Of a stretch of 64,000 nt of DNA, positions 1 to 49,600 are shown piece after piece. The stretch is taken from the NCBI RefSeq assembly GCF_964204645.1, contig NC_134032.1:10094275-10158274 (forward strand), read 5' to 3'. The translations under genes and the position numbers were made by a program. The notes under the pieces were generated by a model, which did no database searches, was not told the origin of the DNA, and was given only the letters and a program-made list of their open reading frames with translations. This DNA comes from Tubulanus polymorphus. Its lineage: Eukaryota; Animalia; Nemertea. How positions within the stretch are numbered: position 1 is the stretch's first letter; the number at the start of each line of letters is the position of its first letter.

Positions 1-2870
1 ATAAAGGATTGAACTTAGTTTAGTTTGCTTGCACGATACCGTTTTAGCCCAAAAATTGATCATTCTACGTTTTACTTCAATATACATAGGATAACGCCCT
101 AGCTCTGCCAGCACTTGCACATTATGGGAATACTTCGTAACTTTCATAATAATTTTACAGAATAAGCAGTGGAGGTTTTCTAGTAAATCGAGATTCTCAT
201 AACCCCAGATTTCGCAGCCGTATAGAGCTACAGGAGCGACACACATGTCAAATAGTTTAAGCATTACATCTATCGGAAGTTTCAAACGTCTACCCTTCTG
301 AATAATAGAAAACATGGCTCTCATAGCTTTATCATAAAGATATTTTTTTGCTTTAGCGAAACTGCCATTCCAGTTGGATTTTACTCCAAGATACAAATAA
401 CCTTCAACTACCACTAACTCTTGGTTACCAAACATAAATTTTCTTGAAATTTTCTTGATCCTACTTTTACTTCTAGCGAAGACTAATATTTTAGTTTTAT
501 CAACATTCACTGAAAGGCCATTGTCGGCGCAATATTCAAATAGTGTCTCTAAATGTAACTGGAGAGATTTTTCATCTTCAGCAAGAATAACTGTGTCATC
601 CGCATACAGGACAATGAATAGATTAAGTAAAGTCCCTAGTTCTGGATCACAATTCAGATTCAGTTTTTCAATAAACGACAAAGTTGGATTACTGCGCGTG
701 AAAAAAAAACTCTTTAATATCGTTTAGAAATAGGGAAAATAGAATTGGTGATAAGTTTTCATCTTGTGGCAAGCCTCTATCTGCAGCAAAGTATTGTGAT
801 GTGTTACCGTTAAATTTAACACATGACTTAACGGAGTTATAAATATTTTCAACTATATTTAAGAAATTCCCCTTTATGCTACTATCGATTAATTTTCTCC
901 ATAATGTAACTCGACAAACCGAGTCAAAAGCCTTCTTAAAATCAACAAAGGCGCAAAAAAGTCTCCTTCCCTGACAAAGGTACAATTCGACAATAGTTTT
1001 CAATGTATAAATGTGATCAATAGTTGAATATTTTGGTCTAAAACCGGCTTGGACCTCGCTAATCATATCATTTGAATCTAGGAAAGCTGACAGTCTATGA
1101 TTAAGTATACTGGCTAGTAAACAATTTACCTAAACAACTAACAAACGTAATGCCTCGATAATTATCAGGATTAGTGGGGTCGCCTTTCTTCTTAAAAATA
1201 GGTTTGATTACTCCTACGGACCATGTTTCTGGAACATGTCCAGTTTTAGATACTAGATTGAATAGGTTTTGTAGTATGTTAACCAAACAGGGATAACGGC
1301 TAAATTTTAATAACTCATTAGTGATTCCATCGATACCAGAAGCCTTATTGTTTTTTAAGAAAGAGATAGCTTTAGTTACTTCATCGACAGTTATGTCGCA
1401 GTTAAGAATATGATTGTCATAGACAGGAGGTTCATCATCCGTATGTTCTACATGATCGTTTATTCCGTTTGCATCGTTTAAATCATTTAGTTGCATAAAA
1501 TGTTCGAAGAAGATATCAATATCAATATTAGCATTACTGTCTTTTGCACCAGTCGCGGAATTTAGAATCGCCCAGTACTTTTTCGGATTATTGATTTCGC
1601 AATCTCTTAGTTCTTTGATAAAAGCTTCTTTTTGTTTTTTCTTACTTTCTCGGATAATTCTTTTGTATTTCTTGGATGAGTTTTTAAGAGCGTCAAAGTT
1701 AGAAGGGGTTGGACGGCCCCTATAACGGCTTTTCCTATAATTATATTCTTTACGCGCATCCCTACAGCTCCGGCCATACCACTTATTACGAACTGGGGTT
1801 CTACGACTCCTACTTTTCCTGTGATACATCAAATCACATTCTTCTGCACTTTCTAACAAGGAAGATACAAATCTATCAGTGAGCTCATTTATATAGTTCG
1901 GAGACTGGCTAACTAGGTCCTGTAGTCCATTCAAAAGTAGATCATTAAGGCCAATATCACATAATTTAGATTCAACTTTCATGAAAAACTGATCCGATCT
2001 ATCATTGTCCCACCTAATTGAAGGCTTTTCGTTTACTTGTTCATGGTTCTCATTATCAGCAACAATAGGGACCTTAGAATTCTTAAGTAAACATAGTCTA
2101 AGTGGACTGTGCCCATCAGACAGTAAAGATTCAAATGGCATTATCTGGAAATCATAAACAGATTCAAAAAGGTCAATATCACATACAAAATAATCAATAA
2201 CACTAGTTTCCCTAAAAGTATAATTACCAGACTGGTCACCACCACATCTGCCATTAAGTATAATCAAAGAATGGTTCTTACAAAGATCAATTAGCTGATA
2301 GCCGGTATTATTAGTTCTTTTGTCTTGATTGTTTAGCAGGGTGTAAATCGTCCTCTAATATATGGTTATCAGGTTCTAGAAAGTCTGGTACACATAAGGT
2401 GTGAGCATTAAAGTCACCTGTAATTAGCACGTTAAAATCGTTTTCAATCTTTAGCTGTAATAATTCCAACTCTATTTCACTAATTGCTCTATTCGAATAG
2501 TATTTACTTGTTTCAGGGGGAATATAAACCACTCCTAAAAGTATGTTTTTATTGAACTTAAACAAATCCTTATCTAAACAGTACCAAGATACAAATGGGC
2601 ACTCAGTAAGTATTGGATCTATCATACTATCTAAACAACGCCTATAAATGATACCGATTCCACCCGATTTCCTGTTCGAAATTTTCTCCCTGTTTTTAAA
2701 ATGTGATACATATGAATCAGGCAAATCATGACTTAGATTCCCATCTACATCGTCGAGGTGGGTTTCAGATAAACAAATGAAATCATAGCTCCGAATAAAA
2801 TCTTCAAATTCCGGGACACCGAGTTTACTATTAATACCACATATATTGAGACTCGCAAAGTTGATACTTT
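1..2870 (-). pseudogene. LINE ORF2 (APE endonuclease + reverse transcriptase), disrupted
   Basis: ORFs 2311-2724, 1101-2267 and 689-1066 are consecutive pieces of one EN-RT polyprotein and are collinear with the ORF at 4418-6364. Confidence 0.88.
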
Positions 2871-3186
2871 TGATTGGTTGATTATTATCGACGTCTAATT
2901 TGTTTTCTTCACTAATACTAGCATAATAAGTGTCTAATTGGATACCTTCAACGTTTTAAAGAGGGGAGACATCTTCAATTAAATTATCAATTACATCATA
3001 ATCATTATTTTCACTATTTATATCTGAGTCATTATTTACATCACGATCATTAATTTCACTATTTACATCAGAATAATCACAGAAAAGAGTAAAACTATCT
3101 ACATAGTCCAGAGCATAGCACCGACCTTTCGAGAGCAACGCTATTCGTTCGAGACATTCGATGAGTATAGTTCCCTCCGCCGCATC

Positions 3187-4001
3187 CTAATTGCTGTCCA
3201 TGGGAGCGCGGTCCCGACGATCGCGGATAACGAGCTTATCCTTAACGAAGTACGCATTTTTCCCGCTGGCCTTCGCAGCCCTGAGTTCGGGTAGTTTCTC
3301 GCGCCGACGATCGGCCCACTCTTTCGGCACTTGTTCGCTCAATCCCTTCGATGTTCCGGTTAAGTTTTTCGCCACGGATCGAACAAGTTCTCGGTCTTTG
3401 AAATGTTCAAATTTCGCGTGGTTTTTTCTGATCACTTCTCGGACGCCCGAGCCGGTGAACTCTCGCAAAGTCGATAGACTGGACTACTTCGTCCTCTAGT
3501 CTAAGATCGTTCTTGCAGAACCCTTTCACCTTTTCCTCCGCGTCTTCGCCTACTGCTTCATCGATCCCGTAGAAAATCAAGTTATCTCGCATGCTCCGCC
3601 ATTGCTGGTCTAACAGGAGTTCGTGATCGGAATTCGCGAGTATTTCTTGGTCCGCTACCTGTTTTTCTAGATGCTGAACTTTGTTACGCAGCATCTCATT
3701 CTCCTGCTTAAGAAGCCTCACGTCCTCGTGACAGTATTCGAGTGACTGCTTAACGTCATTCATGTTTTTTTTCGAGATTGTCTAGCTTGTTCAGTTTATT
3801 AATAATCTCGTCCAGTTTCGCATACAGCGCTTGGTCGTCTCGCGGCGTCGTAGTTTTCTGTTCAAGAATTTGCTTCAGTTGTTTTTCGGAGATGTGTATG
3901 GGTGTCGCAGTCGAGTTTCTGTTACTGGTCTGGTTGGTCTTCGTCGTCAGTTTCGGCTGTTTTCTCGGGGGAGAAACGCTCTGCCGACTGCTACTCGCCA
4001 T
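3187..4001 (-). pseudogene. LINE ORF1 (coiled coil + RRM/CTD, L1-ORF1/Transposase_22-like), split by two frameshifts
   Basis: Three overlapping ORFs join into MASSSRQS...LEKQVADQE..RSMRDNLIFYGIDE..FARVHRLG..EQVPKEWADRR..AYFVKDKLVI. The breaks lie at or near T homopolymers (~3765, ~3425). Confidence 0.8.
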
Positions 4002-4233
4002 GACTCTCGTTGTTGGGGTTGGAAGAGAGAGGGTGAAAAAAAAACTTCGCGTTAAAATCGAAAATAAAACGTTTCTTTTTCGAACAGGGTTATGCTCACA
4101 CACAGCGTTATGTGGTTAATGTATTGATATTACTGGGAAATAGTTTTGATTATCAGTTAAAACTAACCTCGTTGCTTGTGTTCTAGGAGCACACCGAGAG
4201 TACGTCCGTACAGTTTGAAATCCGCGCACGGCC

Positions 4234-6375
4234 TGATTACGATTACGATTACGATTACGATTTATTTACACTCCAACCATTTCCATGGTATATGGAGGAA
4301 AACTATTACACATGTATATACAAATATTTACAAAACAACACTAAAGTGATTAAAATTTAGAGAATGAAAACGTAACGAAATATATATATACATCAACTAT
4401 TTACAATACTATATATACTATTGGAGGGATCTATATACATCTAAGCCGGTCTTAATGAATTTAGCTAAGTTGACCGTTGGGTTTTTCAGAATATCAAGGG
4501 TATTAAAGGTATTCAAATTCAAAAAGTTTTTGCGTTGTTCGTTAAGTAAGGTACAGTCAAACAGAAAATGGGATTCGTCACCTAAAGTATTACAAGTGGG
4601 GCATATTCTATCGGCTCTGTCTAAATGAAGGTTTGAAAATTTGTTCACAGGTAAAATATAGGACCCGACCCTAAATTCAAATAAACTAGTTCCTAAGTCA
4701 TCACCAAGTTCTATTATATACTTCTCTAACCTAATATCATTTTTATATTGCCTAAAGTTAGTGTATATCGGATTAGTATTTATGGCAGATACAGTTTCTT
4801 GAAGGTGCTGGTCACGGAGTATCTGTTTTATTCGTTTTGAAAAAGATTTACTGTTAGTCATGAATTGCTGCGTCCAAATGCAGGACAAACCACAGTCATC
4901 AAACGTTTTCTTTATATATGATAACCAAGGGCTCTTAAATTTATCCCTTAAAAATAAATTGAAAGATATTTTATAGAGTATTGAATTAAGTTTGGTTTGC
5001 TTTCCAGATACTGTTTTCACCCAAAAGTTAATCATCCTGCGTCTAACATCTATATTCAAAGGGTAACGTCCTAGCTCTGATAAAACTTGTAAGTTGCGAG
5101 AATATTTCGTCACTTTCATTAAGATTTTACAGAAGAAGCAATGAATATTTTCTAATAAATCAAGATTTTCATATCCCCAGATCTCACACCCATACATGGC
5201 TATTGGAGCAACACACGTATCAAATAATTTAAACATAACATCTATGGGCAATTTCAAACGTCTGCCTTTTTGAACGATCGAAAACATAGCTCTGATAGCT
5301 TTATCGTAAAGATACTTTTTTGCCTTAGCAAAGTTACCATTCCAATTGAATTTTACTCCGAGATAAACATAATCTTCAACTACCTCTAACTCTTGATCAC
5401 CAAACATAAATTTCGAAATCGTTTTTATCCGGGATTTACTTCGCGCAAATACTAGTACTTTAGTTTTCTCTGGGTTAACAGTGAGACCATTAGCCGCGCA
5501 ATATTCAAATAAGGTATCTAAGTGTAGCTGAAGAGATTTCTCATCCTCAGCAAGAATAACTGTATCATCTGCGTATAGTATTATGAATAAATTCAGTAAA
5601 GTATCAATATCCTGATCACGATTCAAATTTAGTTTTTCTATAAATGACAAAGTTGGTTTTCCACGATCAATGAAAAATTCTTCAATGTCGTTTAAGAATA
5701 ACGAAAAGAGGATAGGTGAGAGATTTTCGCCTTGTCTTAAGCCTCTATCAGCTGCAAAGTATTGTGACGTGCAACCATTTAATTCAACACATGATTTTTT
5801 ATACATATTTTTGACCACATTGAAAAAGTTTCCATTAACATTGTTAGCAATTAATTTTCGCCATAACTTTACCCTACAAATCGAGTCGAAAGCTTTCTTA
5901 AAATCAACAAAGGCGCAAAAAAGTCTTATTCCCTGACAAAGATACAGCTCTACGATTGTTTTAAGCGTGTAAATATGATCAATGGTGGAATATTTCGATC
6001 TAAAGCCAGCCTGGGCTTCACTTATAATGTGATTCGTATCTAGAAATGTTGACAATCTTTGATTTAGGATACTTTTAAATAATTTACCAAGACAGCTAAC
6101 TAAGGTAATACCTCTATAATTATCAGGATTAGAGGGATCGCCATTCTTTTTGAAAATGGGTTTGATGACGCCTATAGACCACATCTCTGGAACATATCCT
6201 GTTTTAAGAACTAAATTGAATAATTTTTGTAATATATCAACTAAAAACGGATACTGACTAACTCCCAGCAGCTCATTCGTGATTCCATCAATGCCTGGGG
6301 CCTTATTGTTTTTGAGTAAAGAGATAGCCTTAATTACCTCATCACTGGTTATATCACTGTTCAAAATATAATTGT
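4234..6375 (-). mobile_element. 5'-truncated LINE of a related RTE-X-like family, with intact RT ORF, 3' UTR and (TCGTAA)n tail
   Basis: 648-aa RT ORF (YADD, ELGRYPL, C-terminal CPTC..DESHFLFDC zinc knuckle). AATAAA and (GATTAC)x4 on the + strand at 4235-4266. Similarity to the left LINE stops at ~6375. Confidence 0.92.
4418..6364 (-). CDS. LINE ORF2 C-terminal part: reverse transcriptase + CCHC knuckle (5'-truncated, no endonuclease)
   Basis: ORF track: NYRGITL, QAGFR, DFKKAFDS, GLRQGENLSP, LYADDT, YLGV motifs. Confidence 0.9.
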   Translation of the reverse strand: MNSDITSDEVIKAISLLKNNKAPGIDGITNELLGVSQYPFLVDILQKLFNLVLKTGYVPEMWSIGVIKPIFKKNGDPSNPDNYRGITLVSCLGKLFKSILNQRLSTFLDTNHIISEAQAGFRSKYSTIDHIYTLKTIVELYLCQGIRLFCAFVDFKKAFDSICRVKLWRKLIANNVNGNFFNVVKNMYKKSCVELNGCTSQYFAADRGLRQGENLSPILFSLFLNDIEEFFIDRGKPTLSFIEKLNLNRDQDIDTLLNLFIILYADDTVILAEDEKSLQLHLDTLFEYCAANGLTVNPEKTKVLVFARSKSRIKTISKFMFGDQELEVVEDYVYLGVKFNWNGNFAKAKKYLYDKAIRAMFSIVQKGRRLKLPIDVMFKLFDTCVAPIAMYGCEIWGYENLDLLENIHCFFCKILMKVTKYSRNLQVLSELGRYPLNIDVRRRMINFWVKTVSGKQTKLNSILYKISFNLFLRDKFKSPWLSYIKKTFDDCGLSCIWTQQFMTNSKSFSKRIKQILRDQHLQETVSAINTNPIYTNFRQYKNDIRLEKYIIELGDDLGTSLFEFRVGSYILPVNKFSNLHLDRADRICPTCNTLGDESHFLFDCTLLNEQRKNFLNLNTFNTLDILKNPTVNLAKFIKTGLDVYRSLQ

Positions 6376-25013: not shown

Positions 25014-26075
25014 TTATTTCACTGAATATCTACAGCGGATTCTCATACAGAAATATTCACGAATCTCTCGTCCCAGTAAAAGATATACGTAGAAATTAAC
25101 CACATAGTTACAAACTCGAAACTGATTGAAAATGTCCAATAGGAATTCTTTCTGTATGGGTGAGAGTGGTAACATTGCAATAGTAGTGGTAGGAATTGTG
25201 GATATCGCAAATGCGAGTGAAACTGTTACAAGCATTATTGTCCTACGTTTTGATTTCGTATTTTTCTGATCGGATGAAACCATTTTTGAACCTACCGGTA
25301 TCCGAAATATCTTATTGATGTTACGGACGCCGTGTACGTATCTCTCCAGACAGAAAGAGAGGCATAGAAAGAAAAAAGAGACGAAAAACAACCTTGTTGT
25401 ACCTCTGAATAACTGAACTATTATGACAGTATTTGATGAAATTATCAGAGTTAACGGAAGAATATAACCGTAGGTGACAATAATCGTAAAATATGTTATC
25501 TGGTCAAATAATTCAAAGTAACAGCCGAAAGACTGGTCGGTGAAATGTATCGACATAGCAGGTGTGAGATATACAACTAGTACATTCACTGCGGTAATTA
25601 TCAGGATAGCAAATCTAGCGAATCTCGGTGTACAGATCAAACGAGATGTGAACGGGAAGAGAACAACTGCCACACGTTCTAGAGATATTACCACTATTAA
25701 CCACGAACTATTGCTGGCTGCAAGTGTCATTACAAAATCATAGATTTGACAACTGATCAGTGAATCCATCAAGAATATTGGATCGCCGTTTAGACGCAAG
25801 AGAACAAACAGTAAAACAGGCATCAGCGTAAAATTGGCGCAGAACGTGAAATCACTGAGGGACAAAACGATCAGATAGTTAGCGTAAGATAAACCGCGGA
25901 ATCTGCGACCAATCATTATCAGGAAAGTAGCCAAATTCCCGAAGACTCCGAACAGAAACAAGACAGGTAGAGTTACTAATAGCACAGTACGGTAGATTCC
26001 AGAGCTGTTCATCACAGACATTAGGACGATGTTGCTACTCTGAGTTCGACCAATTTGCATCTGAGTTGAATTCAT
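25014..26075 (-). CDS. Class A GPCR, paralog 4, with a 111-bp insertion (candidate intron 25292-25402) in ICL3
   Basis: 353 aa unspliced. Removing 25292-25402 restores a 316-aa protein collinear with paralogs 3 and 5. Confidence 0.9.
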   Translation of the reverse strand: MNSTQMQIGRTQSSNIVLMSVMNSSGIYRTVLLVTLPVLFLFGVFGNLATFLIMIGRRFRGLSYANYLIVLSLSDFTFCANFTLMPVLLFVLLRLNGDPIFLMDSLISCQIYDFVMTLAASNSSWLIVVISLERVAVVLFPFTSRLICTPRFARFAILIITAVNVLVVYLTPAMSIHFTDQSFGCYFELFDQITYFTIIVTYGYILPLTLIISSNTVIIVQLFRGTTRLFFVSFFFLCLSFCLERYVHGVRNINKIFRIPVGSKMVSSDQKNTKSKRRTIMLVTVSLAFAISTIPTTTIAMLPLSPIQKEFLLDIFNQFRVCNYVVNFYVYLLLGREIREYFCMRIRCRYSVK

Positions 26076-27090: not shown

Positions 27091-28041
27091 TTATTTGACT
27101 GAATTTCTACAGCGAATTTTCATACAGAAATATTCACGAATTTCTCGTCCCAGTAAAAGATATATGTAGAAGTTTATCACATAGTTGCAAACTTGAAACT
27201 GATTGAAAATGTCCAATAGAAATTCTCTCTGTTCCGGTGAGATTGATAACAATGCAATAATAGTGGATGGAAATGTAGATATTGCGAATGCGAGTGAAAC
27301 TGTTACAAGCATTATTGTTGTACGTTTTGATTTCGCAGTTTTCTGATCGGAAGAAACCATTTTTGAGCCTCTGAATAACTGAACTATTATCAGAGAATTA
27401 GATGTAATAATCAAAGCTAACGGTACGATATAACCGTGGGTGACAATTATGGTAAAAAACGTTATCTGGTCAAATAATTCAAAGTAACACCCGAAAGACT
27501 GGTCGGAAAAATGTATCGACATAGCAGGTGTGAGATAAAGAACCAGTGCGTTCGCTGCAGTAATTATTAGCACTACAAATCTAGCGAATCTCGGTGTACA
27601 TATCAAACGAGATGTGAACGGGAAGAGAACAACTGCCGCACGTTCTAGAGATATTACCACTATTAACCACGAACTATTGCTGGCTGCGAGCGTCATTACA
27701 AAATCGTAGATTTGACAACTGATCAGTGAATCCATCAAGAATATTGGACCGGAGTTTAGACGTAAGAGAACAAACTGTAAAACAGGCATCAGCGTAAAAT
27801 TGGCGCAGAACGTGAAATCACCGAGAGACAAAGCGATCAGATAGTTAGCGTAAGATAAACTCCTGAATCTGCGATTTATCATTATCAGGAAAGTAGCTGA
27901 ATTTCCGAATGCTCCGAACAGAAACAAGATAGGAAGGATAACTAGTAATACAGTACGGTAGATTCCAGATCTGTTGACCACAGACATTAAGACGATGTAA
28001 CTGCTATGAGTTCGACCAATTTGCATATGAGTTGAATTCAT
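27091..28041 (-). CDS. Intronless class A GPCR, paralog 5
   Basis: 316 aa, collinear with the other paralogs. Confidence 0.92.
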   Translation of the reverse strand: MNSTHMQIGRTHSSYIVLMSVVNRSGIYRTVLLVILPILFLFGAFGNSATFLIMINRRFRSLSYANYLIALSLGDFTFCANFTLMPVLQFVLLRLNSGPIFLMDSLISCQIYDFVMTLAASNSSWLIVVISLERAAVVLFPFTSRLICTPRFARFVVLIITAANALVLYLTPAMSIHFSDQSFGCYFELFDQITFFTIIVTHGYIVPLALIITSNSLIIVQLFRGSKMVSSDQKTAKSKRTTIMLVTVSLAFAISTFPSTIIALLSISPEQREFLLDIFNQFQVCNYVINFYIYLLLGREIREYFCMKIRCRNSVK

Positions 28042-40850: not shown

Positions 40851-41996
40851 ATGGCGTTCGATTCGATGAACATTTCGTTGAACATTTCGACGACTTTGCA
40901 GCCGACCGTACAAAGCTGGTCCGGATGGTGCGAGCGCGTTGTGAATACCCAACCGTACCGTTGGGACCTGAAATTCGGCGTTTACATGTATATTTTCGGT
41001 TGCGGATCCTTCACGATACTCGGCATTAGTTTGAACGTCGTCACGCTTCTAGTATTGAAGAAGATGAACAATGAAGTTTATCATTTGATCAGAGTTTTAG
41101 CTATTTTCGATTTATCTTATTGTATAAGCGTATTTATATTGTATCCTTTACGATTAATATACATCTATATACATTTAGGCGGCGAAGTGCTTTTCCGCAA
41201 AGATGATTGGTATTACGGTTATGGATTCATACAAGTGGCCATAGGTCCGTATCAAATGTTTCAACTCGTTCGAAACTGGAGCGTCAGTCTGATCTCGTTT
41301 GAGCGAATCGTTATCACGCTTTTTCCATTGAAATCGCGATTGTTCTGGACGCGAAAAGTGGTGAATTCTTTTGTATTTTTTATCACCGCCTACGGCTTAC
41401 TTTGTTTTTTTCCGCTCATGGTACCGACCGTAAAGTACCGGCCGATAGCATGTGTCACAGGGGATCCCGGTGTGATACTAGTTCGAGGTAAACCATTTTC
41501 ATTTTATCCAGAAATCGTGTTAAAAGCTTTAAGAAAATGGGCACGGTATTCGAATAGCTGGAAAGCATTGATATCCAGTATTTTCATACCGATGATTTTA
41601 CTAATCGTTTTGAATCTCGTTTTGATAATGAGTTTAATAGTTGCGAAACTATCGCGCGGAAAGAAGTTGTCGAGGAGTGCCACCAGTAGCGTAGAACTGC
41701 GCGTTTTACGTATGTCGTTCGCTTTAGTCGCCGTGTACGTTACGTGTGAGTCGTTACTCGTCATAGAAAAGATGGCCTACAGTGGTTTCTTCAGACTTGT
41801 TCGTCTTCCGATTTTGGGTTTATCGGGCTTAAAATTAAGGAAACAACAAGGTTCGATCATGTACCGGAAAATGGCTATCGGTCTGACGGTCGTTGATTCC
41901 TCGTTAAACTTTTTCGTCTATTGTTTCACGAATGGTAAATTCAGACTAGCTGCGAAACATTTACTCGTCGCATGTGCGACCAATCTGAAATGTTAA
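40851..41996 (+). CDS. Intronless class A GPCR (FMRFamide/sex-peptide-receptor-like group), distant from the five clustered paralogs
   Basis: 381 aa with GISLNVV, LAIFD, RNWSVSLISFERIV..LFPLKS, FIP, VYVTCE and DSSLNFFVY. Confidence 0.88.
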   Translation: MAFDSMNISLNISTTLQPTVQSWSGWCERVVNTQPYRWDLKFGVYMYIFGCGSFTILGISLNVVTLLVLKKMNNEVYHLIRVLAIFDLSYCISVFILYPLRLIYIYIHLGGEVLFRKDDWYYGYGFIQVAIGPYQMFQLVRNWSVSLISFERIVITLFPLKSRLFWTRKVVNSFVFFITAYGLLCFFPLMVPTVKYRPIACVTGDPGVILVRGKPFSFYPEIVLKALRKWARYSNSWKALISSIFIPMILLIVLNLVLIMSLIVAKLSRGKKLSRSATSSVELRVLRMSFALVAVYVTCESLLVIEKMAYSGFFRLVRLPILGLSGLKLRKQQGSIMYRKMAIGLTVVDSSLNFFVYCFTNGKFRLAAKHLLVACATNLKC

Positions 41997-46600: not shown

Positions 46601-49600
46601 TGGATAAGATGGATAGTTGGAAAGACCCCCAATGACATCAGTTAAGATGGCTAGATGATAAACCCCCAAATGGTGTCATCAGATTTTTCCGACCAGATAT
46701 AGGCCTATTGGGATGGCCGCCTTCTTGAATCTCCCTATGACATCATGGCATGAATCTTCACAAAAATCAATTATCGAGAATTTCGATAACATTTTCGATG
46801 GATCGGAACATTTGGGGGGAAATTCGACGATGGCATCGGGGGACGTTACAGAAGCAGCCGTCTCGGGCATAGGTTGGCCACAATATGGATAAAGTTGAAA
46901 CTCGTTGATACGATTCTGTTAAAGACGAAACCTGTTTATAGTATGATGATTTCCAGCGTGTCCCCGGCTGACGTACAGTAAACCTTACTTAACTCGGACA
47001 AACTGGGACTGGTGAAATCGGTCCGAGATAAGGGTAGTCGGAGTGAGGGATAGGAAAATGCGTTAGTTAGAAAAATTAGTTGGAAATTGGAAAAATTAGT
47101 TAGTTTTTGTCGCGAGTTAGTCGAAAGTCCGAGATGGCCGTGTGCGAGTAAGGCGAGGTTTACTGTATTAAGGCCTATATCAACCGGGCTTTGGATGCTA
47201 CGAAACCCGTTTAATGTAACAACGATTTCGACGCAAAATTCGTATCAACTAGTTTCCACTGTATCTATCTGATCGGTGAGTAGCGGTGCGATCAGCATTT
47301 CCACATGAAGCGGCTTTGAAAACAATGATTTAAACGGCGTAATGATGTTGCTGGTCGTGCTGTATATACGTAGAAAGAGTATCTACGATAATGAATCCAA
47401 TAGGATACGGTTAATTGTATAACCGCGTAATTACCGGAATGACAGTAATATGTGTTTATATAGTCAGTAATAATTATTAGTATGTTTTAATAATACGGAT
47501 CTCCTGTTGCTCTGTTTGTTGTGCGGTGGGATAGATCCTGAATACTGGTTCTCGTCGGTTCTGCTAACTACTGCTACTGCTGCTGCTTCCTCGTCATTAT
47601 TTGCTGAAACCGATCTCTCTCTCTCATTATGGTTATGAGTGTTTGTTTAAATGCGTGCTCGTTATTTGTACGGGATACGCGTTTATGACATTTCATCAAA
47701 GACCGTATTCAATCCCTGAATTACATGCCCTTTCTACAGACAGACTCCCTCATCCCCTCACAGATTCATTCACCCCTCATCACTCACAGACCCCCTCATC
47801 CCCTCACATACTCCCTCATCCCCTCACATACTCCCTCATCCCTTCCCAGACCCCCTTGCATCCCCTCACATACTCCCTCATCCTTTCACAGATTCCCTCA
47901 TCCCCTCACAGACTCCCTCATCCTCTCACAGATTCCTCCATCCCCTAACAGATTCTTTCATCCCCTCACATACTCCCCCATCCTCTCAGACTCCCTCATC
48001 CCCTCACAGATTCCCTTCTTTCACAAACTCCCTCATAGACTCCTTCCTCCCATCACAGATTCCCTCATCCCCTCACTGACTCCCTCATCTCACCGACTCC
48101 TTCACCCTCACACAGACTTCTTCATCCTCACAAAGACTCACTCATCCCCTCACATCCTCCCCCACATGTTACACTTCCCCACAGTGTGCCGCTTTGATCC
48201 ATAATTTTGTTAATAATCTGGTGATCTACGTGTAATGCATCAGTTTGTTCAGTAATGATTTATCTATATTTTTCAGTATGCAATTTGGCTGTTACTGTGG
48301 TTAGCTGTTGGTATATTTGTGATTTGTTTATATCTAAAAATAGGACTGCTGACTGATGTAAGTATATATATGACGACAATCTCAACCCGCGCATTTGGGC
48401 TTAGCCATTTGGGCTTTAGGTGTGTTTTCATAAAAAGACTTTCTTAAAAAAGCAACAATATTTGTCCTTGTACGTTTACGTAGTTGGATGGCATTCAAGT
48501 GTTGAGCATCGGAACACGTTCGGAAAGCTGGTGGCTACAATACGGAATCGGCTGCGGAACGCGGCAAGGATGTCTGCTCGCGTGGCAATACGTCGAAATC
48601 ATCCATACTGGTTTACAATGTTTATTATGTGTAAGTAATCGCTGCTGTTTATGGGACCATGTCGAAAATTTTGATGGGATCGCATTTTACAGGTATAGAT
48701 CCTTCGAGAAAAGATGGCTGCTGCCATAAACCCCCATTTGACTACCTTCGAAATCCCCCCTCTTACATCATCAAATTGCGCGCATCGACATTACGGAAAA
48801 TATGGCTGCCTTCGTAATTCTCCCTATGATGTCATCACATTGCCCTATAACAGGCATAACAGAACCGAAGAATGCCTTCTTTATTCCACGTATGATGTCA
48901 TTCATCGCATTGAACCTATGGACACTGCAAAAAGATAACTGCCTTCATAATTCCCCCTATGACATCATCACACTGCCCGTATGGACGCTGTAAAAAAGAT
49001 GACTACCCAAAAATGCTTAATGTCTGTTTCAACTTAACTTAAGAGGACGTGGGGTGGCGTAGCTCAGCCAGTTTTTGTAGAACATACATGATATAGATCT
49101 TAAAAAGACCAGCACAGGTGGGCAGCTGAACTAAAACATTGATTTTTAATCCCTTTGACACTGTATTAAAAGATTTACCAAAAAGTGTTTTTGAATGCAG
49201 GAGAATAGAGAAAAGTGACACCATAATTTTAATATTTGACCATAGGTTTTCTATGCGTCCGTATCTACATACCATAATTTTTGGTGATCTGAAAAAAAGT
49301 TTTGTTGGTAGGCATGGAAACAAATTGTTAAACTTGATTTATTAAAGAAAATGTTGTCTCTTTTCTCTATTCCACCCCATTTAAACAATACTTTTTGCCA
49401 TCCTTCGATACAGTGTAAAATGGATTCATAATGTTATAGTTCAACTGCCAGTCTGTGCTGATCCTATTAGGACCTATATCGGGTGTGTGTCTGAGCTAGG
49501 CCACCCGATATCCTTTCAAGCTAAGTTAGAATAGTTGCTGTAGAGACTTCCCCAAAAAAACGAGCTCATAGATTGATGAAATAAATGAAAAGTCCACGCC

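What the first reader, a model, noticed from the sequence alone, without database searches (positions are those of the whole stretch)
25292..25402. Candidate de novo intron: 111-bp GT..AG insertion with AGGT duplication in one intronless GPCR paralog
Seen in sequence: paralog 3 reads CAGAGGTTCAAAA on the minus strand, while paralog 4 reads CAGAG|GTACAAC...CCGGTAG|GTTCAAAA. The 4-mer AGGT is duplicated around the insert, so splicing GT..AG would restore the coding sequence perfectly. The insert is a multiple of 3 and stop-free, so retention just adds 37 aa to ICL3. Established knowledge: duplication of an AGGT proto-splice site is the route by which Introner-type elements or repair insertions create introns. 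Four empty paralogs alongside give the ancestral state. Caveat: the donor (GTACAA) and the pyrimidine tract before the AG are weak.
Basis: partly seen in the sequence, partly recalled or inferred. Interest (0 to 1): 0.8.

Follow-up and report, generated by a model that had tools for sequence, protein, structure and literature searches.

The report
Fresh break-repair insert, possible newborn intron
One receptor gene of a ribbon worm recently gained a 108-base copy of single-copy DNA from another chromosome, most likely as a patch during break repair; it landed so that it could be spliced out as a new intron, but nothing here shows that it is.

Summary
Of five tandem intronless GPCR genes, only the one at 25014-26075 (minus strand) carries 111 extra bases (25292-25402). 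They are in frame, stop-free and flanked by a duplicated (A)GGT.

New here: the insert is not an Introner. Its core (25293-25400, 108 bp) is 100% identical to one other place in the genome, C6:7525421-7525528, which is single-copy and has no ORF, TE or RNA match. The genome is Tubulanus polymorphus. The junctions show 0-1 nt of microhomology, a 3-4 bp target duplication, no poly(A) and no terminal repeats. This fits a very young templated or captured DNA patch at a staggered double-strand break.

Whether it is an intron could not be tested, because no RNA data were reachable. A splice model built from 56 introns of this genome puts the donor at the 18th percentile and the acceptor at the 7th. 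The 3' T-tract falls at the 2nd-3rd percentile. The length fits the short-intron class. Each insert-free paralog ORF holds 5-21 equally good GT..AG decoy pairs.

If retained, the insert adds a hydrophobic 37-aa stretch after TM5.

The scan has unchecked notes of other templated or break-repair insertions elsewhere in this genome, but none of this one.

I put the chance that it is spliced at about 0.2.

The parts
25014..26075 (-). Intronless rhodopsin-type GPCR gene (paralog 4). It is 353 aa with the insert read through.
   Evidence: ORF. Pfam 7tm_1 E=4.8e-12. dN/dS against the other paralogs is 0.22-0.38.
25293..25400 (-). 108-bp copy of single-copy DNA from G000:C6:7525421-7525528, with 108/108 bases identical.
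25401..25403 (-). Left copy of the duplicated target GGT (AGGT if 25404 is included). The GT at 25402-25401 is the would-be 5' splice site.
25290..25292 (-). Right copy of the duplicated target GGT. The preceding A (25293) is ambiguous between donor and target. The AG at 25293-25292 is the would-be 3' splice site.
25292..25402 (-). Candidate 111-nt phase-1 GT..AG intron. If not spliced, it is a 37-aa in-frame insertion (TTRLFFVSFFFLCLSFCLERYVHGVRNINKIFRIPVG) after TM5, in intracellular loop 3.
   Evidence: Donor 5.6 bits (18th percentile of real introns), acceptor 2.5 bits (7th percentile). The 19-residue hydropathy peak is 1.82.
25287..25297 (-). Junction-born donor-like motif ccg|GTAGGT (G at 25295). 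It is the best-scoring GT in the whole gene at 6.7 bits.
13450..14403 (-). Insert-free paralog (317 aa).
15812..16756 (-). Insert-free paralog (314 aa).
23090..24040 (-). Insert-free paralog (316 aa). Its empty site reads CAGAGGTTCAAAA.
27091..28041 (-). Insert-free paralog (316 aa) and the closest relative: 89% DNA identity, dS 0.29.

Best explanation
A staggered double-strand break in the ICL3-coding part of one intronless GPCR gene of Tubulanus polymorphus was repaired by end joining. A 108-bp piece of DNA copied from a single-copy, non-coding place on another chromosome-scale contig (C6) was used as a patch. Filling in the 3-4-nt overhangs duplicated (A)GGT.

Shown: the insert, its single donor, the junction anatomy and its extreme youth.

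Inferred: the repair pathway. Whether the patch was a DNA fragment or a cDNA is open.

Because the break fell on AGGT, the insert happens to be bounded by GT..AG, so it could be removed exactly as a phase-1 intron. Its 3' splice signals are poor. My reading is that most transcripts, if the gene is expressed at all, keep it. That would give a receptor with an extra hydrophobic 37 aa after TM5, which is probably a damaged or neutral allele of a highly redundant family. The allele is probably still polymorphic.
For: - **One donor.** There is exactly one other copy in the 268-Mb genome, 108/108 identical, on another contig.
- **Donor context.** The donor flanks are unrelated to the target flanks. 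1.4 kb around the donor is otherwise single-copy. There is no Pfam match and no Rfam match.
- **Junctions.** Microhomology is 0 nt on the left and 0-1 nt on the right. The target duplication is 3-4 bp. There is no poly(A) and no terminal inverted repeats.
- **Derived state.** All other family members lack the insert.
- **Age.** There are 0/108 differences from the donor, against dS 0.29-0.40 between paralogs. The insertion is therefore many times younger than the gene duplications.
- **Splice signals.** The donor is at the 18th percentile and the acceptor at the 7th percentile of 56 own-genome introns. The T fraction at -20..-4 is 0.29 against 0.55+-0.12. GC is 41% against 35+-5%.
- **Decoys.** Each insert-free paralog ORF holds 5-21 GT..AG pairs with an equal or better summed score.
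- **Known process.** Templated or captured insertions from distant loci at repaired breaks are established (PMC5110952, PMC11724301).
Against: - The combination of a 3n length, no stop and exact GT-AG excisability is rare for a random event: about 0.14% given 3n, or about 0.05% overall. This hints at a filter that cares about both the reading frame and splicing.
- The donor GAG|GTACAA resembles real short-intron donors of this genome such as aag|GTACAT.
- 111 nt fits the 77-125-nt short-intron class.
- The family evolves under purifying selection (dN/dS 0.2-0.4), so a crippling insertion would not be neutral if this copy matters.
- That C6 is the donor rests on parsimony. No outgroup was available.
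Confidence: 0.65

Rival explanations
1. Newborn spliceosomal intron. The same break-repair insertion occurred, but the GT..AG made by the AGGT duplication is used by the spliceosome at least part of the time. This would restore the 316-aa receptor, and the open 3n insert would make unspliced transcripts harmless.
For: - Exact excision restores the paralog-type sequence R-G-S-K.
- The donor lies within the real range (18th percentile) and matches real aag|GTACAT donors. The length fits the short-intron class.
- Only about 1% of random insertions would be excisable, and only about 0.14% would be excisable and open as well.
- Break-repair intron gain with short flanking repeats is a published model (PMC3443670, PMC4202315, PMC3020277).
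Against: - No transcript evidence was reachable.
- The acceptor is at the 7th percentile, the T-tract at the 2nd-3rd percentile and GC at the 93rd-97th percentile of real introns.
- The predicted RNA fold pairs the 3' end, including the GGUA just before the AG.
- Equally good decoy pairs sit in presumably unspliced paralog ORFs.
- The host family is otherwise intronless.
- The rarity argument suffers from ascertainment, because the case was flagged for these very features.
Confidence: 0.2
2. The patch was made from RNA. A transcript of the C6 region was reverse-transcribed (LINE reverse transcriptases are present in the genome) and the cDNA was used to fill the break. This would be a class-2 templated sequence insertion. 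It is a variant of the best explanation, not exclusive of it.
For: - In human cells, patches from distant loci were reported to derive from RNA (PMC5110952).
- Non-LTR reverse-transcriptase ORFs lie in this window at 689-6364.
- The donor stays intact.
Against: - There is no poly(A) and no sign that the donor is transcribed.
- No Rfam family matches and no gene was recognised there.
- The copy ends match neither exon borders nor an RNA end.
Confidence: 0.2
3. Mobile element or Introner-like family with a 3-4-bp target duplication.
For: A short target duplication at AGGT is what transposon-born introns show (PMC3443670).
Against: - There are only two copies in 268 Mb, even at E<=10.
- There are no terminal inverted repeats.
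- The C6 copy has no matching target duplication: at most AA against (A)GGT.
- The C6 surroundings are unique.
Confidence: 0.02
4. Assembly or sequencing artefact.
For: Perfect identity to another locus is what a chimeric read could give.
Against: A chimera does not return to the same locus after 108 bp, and it does not create a clean 3-bp target duplication with both flanks collinear. Reads could not be inspected.
Confidence: 0.03

Closest known systems
Templated sequence insertions / DNA 'patches' at repaired double-strand breaks (class 2 TSIPs of human genomes; distant templated insertions in yeast)
   Same: A short stretch copied from a distant locus on a different chromosome-scale contig, with that locus left intact. 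The junctions are end-joining type with 0-1 nt microhomology. There is no poly(A) and no LINE-type target site (PMC5110952, PMC11724301).
   Different: Here there is a 3-4-bp target duplication, which implies a staggered break with fill-in. Class 2 TSIPs are described as lacking duplications. The event lies inside a coding exon and keeps the frame. Whether an RNA intermediate was involved is unknown.
[quoted passage not shown] 2009/2014, Farlow et al. 2011)
   Same: A novel sequence inside a formerly uninterrupted exon, flanked by a short direct repeat, at an AGGT proto-splice site. It is young enough to be a likely polymorphism (PMC3443670, PMC4202315, PMC3020277).
   Different: In Daphnia the inserts were shown to be removed from mRNA, and their sources were mostly not found. 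Here the source is found at 100% identity but splicing is untested, and the 3' signals are weak.
Introner / Introner-like elements and transposon-born introns
   Same: Insertion at AGGT with duplication would allow exact splicing (PMC3443670).
   Different: This is not a multi-copy family (2 copies), it has no terminal repeats, and the donor is ordinary single-copy DNA.
Intron creation by tandem duplication of an AGGT-containing exon segment (Hellsten et al. 2011, cited from my own knowledge; reviewed in PMC3443670)
   Same: The two splice sites come from two copies of AGGT.
   Different: Only 3-4 bases are duplicated. The body of the would-be intron is foreign DNA, not a copy of the exon.

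Membership tests
Spliceosomal intron (newly gained) | GT...AG borders whose removal restores the uninterrupted coding sequence | tested here: met
   G|GT...AG|GT. The flanks align without a gap to four paralogs. The joined model itself was not built or searched.
Spliceosomal intron (newly gained) | Splice signals and composition within the range of the genome's own introns | tested here: inconclusive
   Donor at the 18th percentile, acceptor at the 7th, summed score at the 9th, T-tract at the 2nd-3rd, GC at the 93rd-97th. The length fits. Decoy pairs of equal score occur in the paralog ORFs.
Spliceosomal intron (newly gained) | Absent from mature mRNA | not testable with these tools
   No transcript data were available. 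The five paralogs are not in the protein collection, and only four annotated relatives were found.
Introner / Introner-like element | Many near-identical copies, mostly in introns | tested here: not met
   Two copies in 268 Mb at E<=10. The donor flanks are single-copy.
Introner / Introner-like element | Transposon ends (terminal inverted repeats) with a constant target duplication | tested here: not met
   The ends ACAACAAGG... and ...ATACCGGTA are not inverted repeats. The C6 copy lacks a matching duplication.
Templated / captured insertion at an end-joined double-strand break | Insert identical to a distant genomic locus that remains in place | tested here: met
   108/108 identity to C6:7525421-7525528, with the donor intact in its own unique context.
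Templated / captured insertion at an end-joined double-strand break | End-joining junctions: little or no microhomology, small duplications or deletions, no poly(A), no LINE endonuclease site | tested here: met
   0 and 0-1 nt microhomology, a 3-4-bp duplication, no A-tract.
Templated / captured insertion at an end-joined double-strand break | Nature of the patch (DNA fragment, copied by synthesis, or cDNA) | not testable with these tools
   The sequence alone does not tell. There was no Rfam or Pfam match at the donor.
LINE-mediated retrocopy (class 1 templated insertion) | Target duplication of 5 bp or more, poly(A) tail, TTTT/A target | tested here: not met
   A 3-4-bp duplication, no poly(A), and the target is CAGAGGT/TCAAAA (criteria from PMC5110952).
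Rhodopsin-type GPCR (Pfam 7tm_1) | Match to PF00001 above the curated cut-off | tested here: met
   46.4 bits with the insert and 64 bits for the insert-free neighbour, against a cut-off of 30.5.

The most novel reading that the evidence does not exclude
An intron caught at birth. A break-repair patch with an identifiable, 100%-identical single-copy donor landed on an AGGT proto-splice site of an intronless receptor gene and is already spliced, at least partly. Its 3n, stop-free body would make failed splicing harmless. This would be a rare case where both the source DNA and the first step of break-repair intron gain are visible.
Probability: 0.2. Interest if true: 0.7.

Novelty: new member of a known kind. 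Interest (0 to 1): 0.45.

Why it matters
How new spliceosomal introns arise is still debated. Break repair is one proposed route, but the source DNA of young introns is usually untraceable (PMC4202315, PMC3443670). Here the source, the target, the duplication and the ancestral empty sites are all readable. One RNA-seq or RT-PCR experiment on Tubulanus polymorphus would therefore show whether a random patch at a proto-splice site is spliced from the start. If it is not spliced, this is simply a clean germ-line example of a templated insertion polymorphism in a lophotrochozoan, which is ordinary.

Tried and rejected
- **Introner or mobile-element family:** rejected. There are two copies only, no inverted ends, and the donor is single-copy.
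- **LINE-type retrocopy:** rejected. There is no poly(A), and the duplication is under 5 bp.
- **Small-RNA gene as donor:** no Rfam match at E<=1 in 2 kb around the donor.
- **Coding exon as donor:** the 117-aa ORF that crosses the donor has no Pfam match. The copy ends do not coincide with the nearby AG and GT that could bound an exon.
- **Microhomology-primed copying (polymerase-theta style):** the junctions do not fit. Priming on the donor's GGT would give ...ATACCGGTTCAAAA, not the observed ...ATACCGGTAGGTTCAAAA (reasoned).
- **Hairpins defining the fragment ends:**
  - The 108-mer starts with ACAAC-AAG-GTTGT and ends with the palindrome TACCGGTA. Both features together occur in 0.15% of random 108-mers, and the plus-strand RNA fold has z = -3.1.
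  - In donor context, however, the 5' stem extends 2 bp beyond the breakpoint, and the folds with flanks are not unusual (z = -0.7 and -1.4).
  - This is post hoc and is left as a curiosity.
- **Annotation evidence for splicing:** exact look-ups of all five paralog proteins found nothing. The word search found only four annotated T. polymorphus relatives at 58% identity or less, so public annotation says nothing either way.
- **Haplotig without the insert:** none in the assembly.
- **Joined (spliced) protein model:** not built, searched or folded. The two coding parts were judged only through the alignment with the paralogs.

Full report
**1. The observation**

On the minus strand the window carries five tandem, uninterrupted ORFs of 314-353 aa, at 13450-14403, 15812-16756, 23090-24040, 25014-26075 and 27091-28041. 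They are rhodopsin-type GPCRs (Pfam 7tm_1).

In their DNA alignment, only 25014-26075 has 111 extra columns. The sequence reads ...TTCAGAG|GTACAAC...ATACCGGTAG|GTTCAAAA, with the extra bases at 25402..25292.

The insert keeps the frame and has no stop, so the ORF is 353 aa. Removing 25402..25292 would restore ...F-R-G-S-K..., which makes it a would-be phase-1 intron.

Across the genome the family is very large. A protein search gave 1850 first-look candidates, and all 125 that were scored were about 315 aa and uninterrupted. At least 40 scored DNA relatives all break exactly at the insert. The insert is therefore derived and unique to this copy.

**2. Where the insert came from**

A search of the window's own assembly (268 Mb, 77 contigs) with the insert and short flanks found exactly one other place, even at E<=10. 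That place is G000:C6:7525421-7525528, which is 108/108 identical to window 25293-25400.

The flanks there are unrelated to the target flanks:
- Donor: ...gccagataa|ACAAC...CCGGTA|attattg...
- Target: ...ttcagaggt|ACAAC...CCGGTA|ggttcaaaa...

A 1.4-kb stretch around the donor has no other match in the genome apart from the 108 bp. The donor surroundings show only short ORFs. The 117-aa ORF that crosses the donor has no Pfam match, and there is no Rfam match within 2 kb.

So the insert is a copy of ordinary single-copy, apparently non-coding DNA from another chromosome-scale contig. It is not a member of a repeat family. The Introner idea fails on copy number, on the lack of terminal inverted repeats, and on the lack of a matching duplication at C6.

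**3. Junction anatomy and mechanism**

- The left junction has no microhomology.
- The right junction has at most one ambiguous base. The A at 25293 can belong either to the donor or to the target.
- The target duplication is GGT for certain (25401-25403 and 25290-25292), or AGGT if the A is counted.
- There is no poly(A). The target is not a TTTT/A site.
- Priming on the donor's internal GGT would give a different junction from the one seen.

This is the signature of a staggered break whose 3-4-nt overhangs were filled in, with the ends joined to a foreign fragment. It matches the 'patch' type of templated insertion known from human polymorphisms and from yeast break-repair assays (PMC5110952, PMC11724301).

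The pathway is an inference from the junctions. Whether the patch was a DNA fragment or a cDNA cannot be told from sequence.

**4. Age**

Insert and donor differ at 0 of 108 sites. That gives a rough 95% upper bound of about 3% divergence. The five paralogs differ from each other by dS 0.29-0.40. The insertion is therefore far younger than the gene duplications, and young enough that it may still be polymorphic.

dN/dS between paralogs is 0.21-0.38. The family, including the lineage of this copy, was under purifying selection for most of its history.

**5. Organism**

The best database relatives are annotated proteins of Tubulanus polymorphus. One of them, P0001, matches the assembly at 100% over its full length. 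The genome is therefore this ribbon worm, as earlier notes of the scan also say (s1-518606, s1-503544).

None of the five window paralogs is in the protein collection by exact sequence. Only four relatives turned up in the word search. Public annotation therefore gives no hint on splicing.

**6. Could it be spliced?**

With no transcripts to hand, I built a splice model from this genome.
- Exon-by-exon Pfam matches to myosin, TCP1 and kinesin genes were fetched.
- Each pair of neighbouring exons was joined by the GT..AG that keeps the frame and the profile coordinates.
- This gave 56 uniquely placed introns, or 88 with resolved ambiguous cases.

Scored against that model:

| Feature | Candidate | Position among real introns |
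|---|---|---|
| Donor gag\|GTACAA | 5.6 bits | 18th percentile (leave-one-out) |
| Acceptor ...GGATACCGGTAG\|g | 2.5 bits | 7th percentile |
| Summed score | 8.1 bits | 9th percentile |

Real short introns include donors such as aag|GTACAT. A third of the introns are 71-125 nt long, so 111 nt fits that class.

The 3' side is poor:
- The T fraction at -20..-4 is 0.29 against 0.55+-0.12, which is the 2nd-3rd percentile.
- GC is 41% against 35+-5%.
- The predicted RNA fold also pairs the last bases before the AG.

As a control, each insert-free paralog ORF holds 5-21 GT..AG pairs, 70-500 nt apart, with an equal or better summed score. These signals therefore do not separate the candidate from sites that are presumably never used.

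The insertion also created the best donor-like site of the whole gene, ccg|GTAGGT at 25295. That site could compete with the candidate donor.

**7. If it is retained**

The 37 added residues (TTRLFFVSFFFLCLSFCLERYVHGVRNINKIFRIPVG) sit directly after TM5. They contain a 19-residue window of hydropathy 1.82, within the range of the receptor's own helices at 1.64-2.27. The Pfam score is 46 bits, against 64 bits for the nearest insert-free paralog. A retained insert is thus more likely to disturb the receptor than to be a harmless loop extension. In a family of hundreds of copies, such an allele may be nearly neutral.

**8. How odd is the combination?**

I simulated random 108-mers from this genome inserted with a 3-bp duplication at random sites of the insert-free paralogs.

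| Outcome | Share of trials |
|---|---|
| Open reading frame kept | 12-14% |
| Exactly GT-AG excisable | 1.06% |
| Excisable and open | 0.14% |
| Excisable, open, and scoring at least as well as the candidate | 0.011% |

A further factor of 1/3 applies for a length divisible by three.

This rarity is the best argument for a real role of splicing with tolerated retention. But the case was picked out for exactly these features, and the number of insertions screened is unknown. I count it as a hint only.

**9. Comparison with known kinds**

The event works like a templated insertion at a repaired break. As a candidate, it is what the break-repair model of intron gain predicts as the first step (PMC3443670, PMC3020277, PMC4202315). 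In Daphnia the new introns were shown to be spliced but their sources mostly could not be found. Here the source is plain and the splicing is unknown.

It is not an Introner, not a LINE retrocopy, and not a tandem-duplication intron.

**10. Verdict**

The origin is resolved as a very young patch copied from C6 at a staggered break on AGGT. The Introner reading is rejected. The intron reading remains open, at about 0.2.

The scan holds unchecked notes of other templated or break-repair insertions elsewhere in this genome (s1-503544, s1-508819, s1-518820), but none of this one.

Noticed in passing
window 25293-25400 and L004:4922-5029: The copied 108-mer begins with a small hairpin (ACAAC-AAG-GTTGT) and ends with the palindrome TACCGGTA. 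Both features together occur in 0.15% of random 108-mers, and the plus-strand RNA fold has z = -3.1. In donor context the 5' stem runs 2 bp past the breakpoint and the folds are unremarkable. It could mean a structured single-stranded fragment trimmed back to its stems, or it could be chance.
   Followed up: partly
window 25287-25297 (-): The right junction creates ccg|GTAGGT, the strongest donor-like site in the gene at 6.7 bits. With a weak AG at 25122 it would give a frame-preserving 174-nt deletion.
   Followed up: partly
window 689-6364 (-): Two copies of a non-LTR retrotransposon reading frame. The 648-aa ORF at 4418-6364 has an RT-like YADD motif. Broken pieces lie at 689-2724.
   Followed up: no
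window 40851-41996 (+): Another uninterrupted 381-aa ORF that looks like a 7TM receptor. It is unrelated in sequence to the tandem cluster.
   Followed up: no
window 47725-48204 (+): A 159-aa ORF made of a degenerate Pro/Ser/His-rich repeat (…SLIPSQIP…HPLTDSLI…). It is probably a translated tandem repeat.
   Followed up: no
G000 genome-wide: The GPCR family of this cluster is very large: 1850 first-look candidates, with 125 of 125 scored being full-length and almost all open. Yet only four relatives appear among annotated T. polymorphus proteins in the collection. Most of the family seems unannotated.
   Followed up: partly
L005-L059 (myosin, TCP1 and kinesin genes of G000): Intron lengths in this genome look bimodal. 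There is a tight short class at about 71-125 nt (29 of 88) and a broad class around 300-700 nt. Donor sites are fairly degenerate: G at +5 in only 61%, and A at +3 in 86%.
   Followed up: partly
G000:C12:6519527-6566610: Three copies of the P0001 receptor gene at 99-100% protein identity lie within 47 kb. This is a very recent triplication.
   Followed up: no
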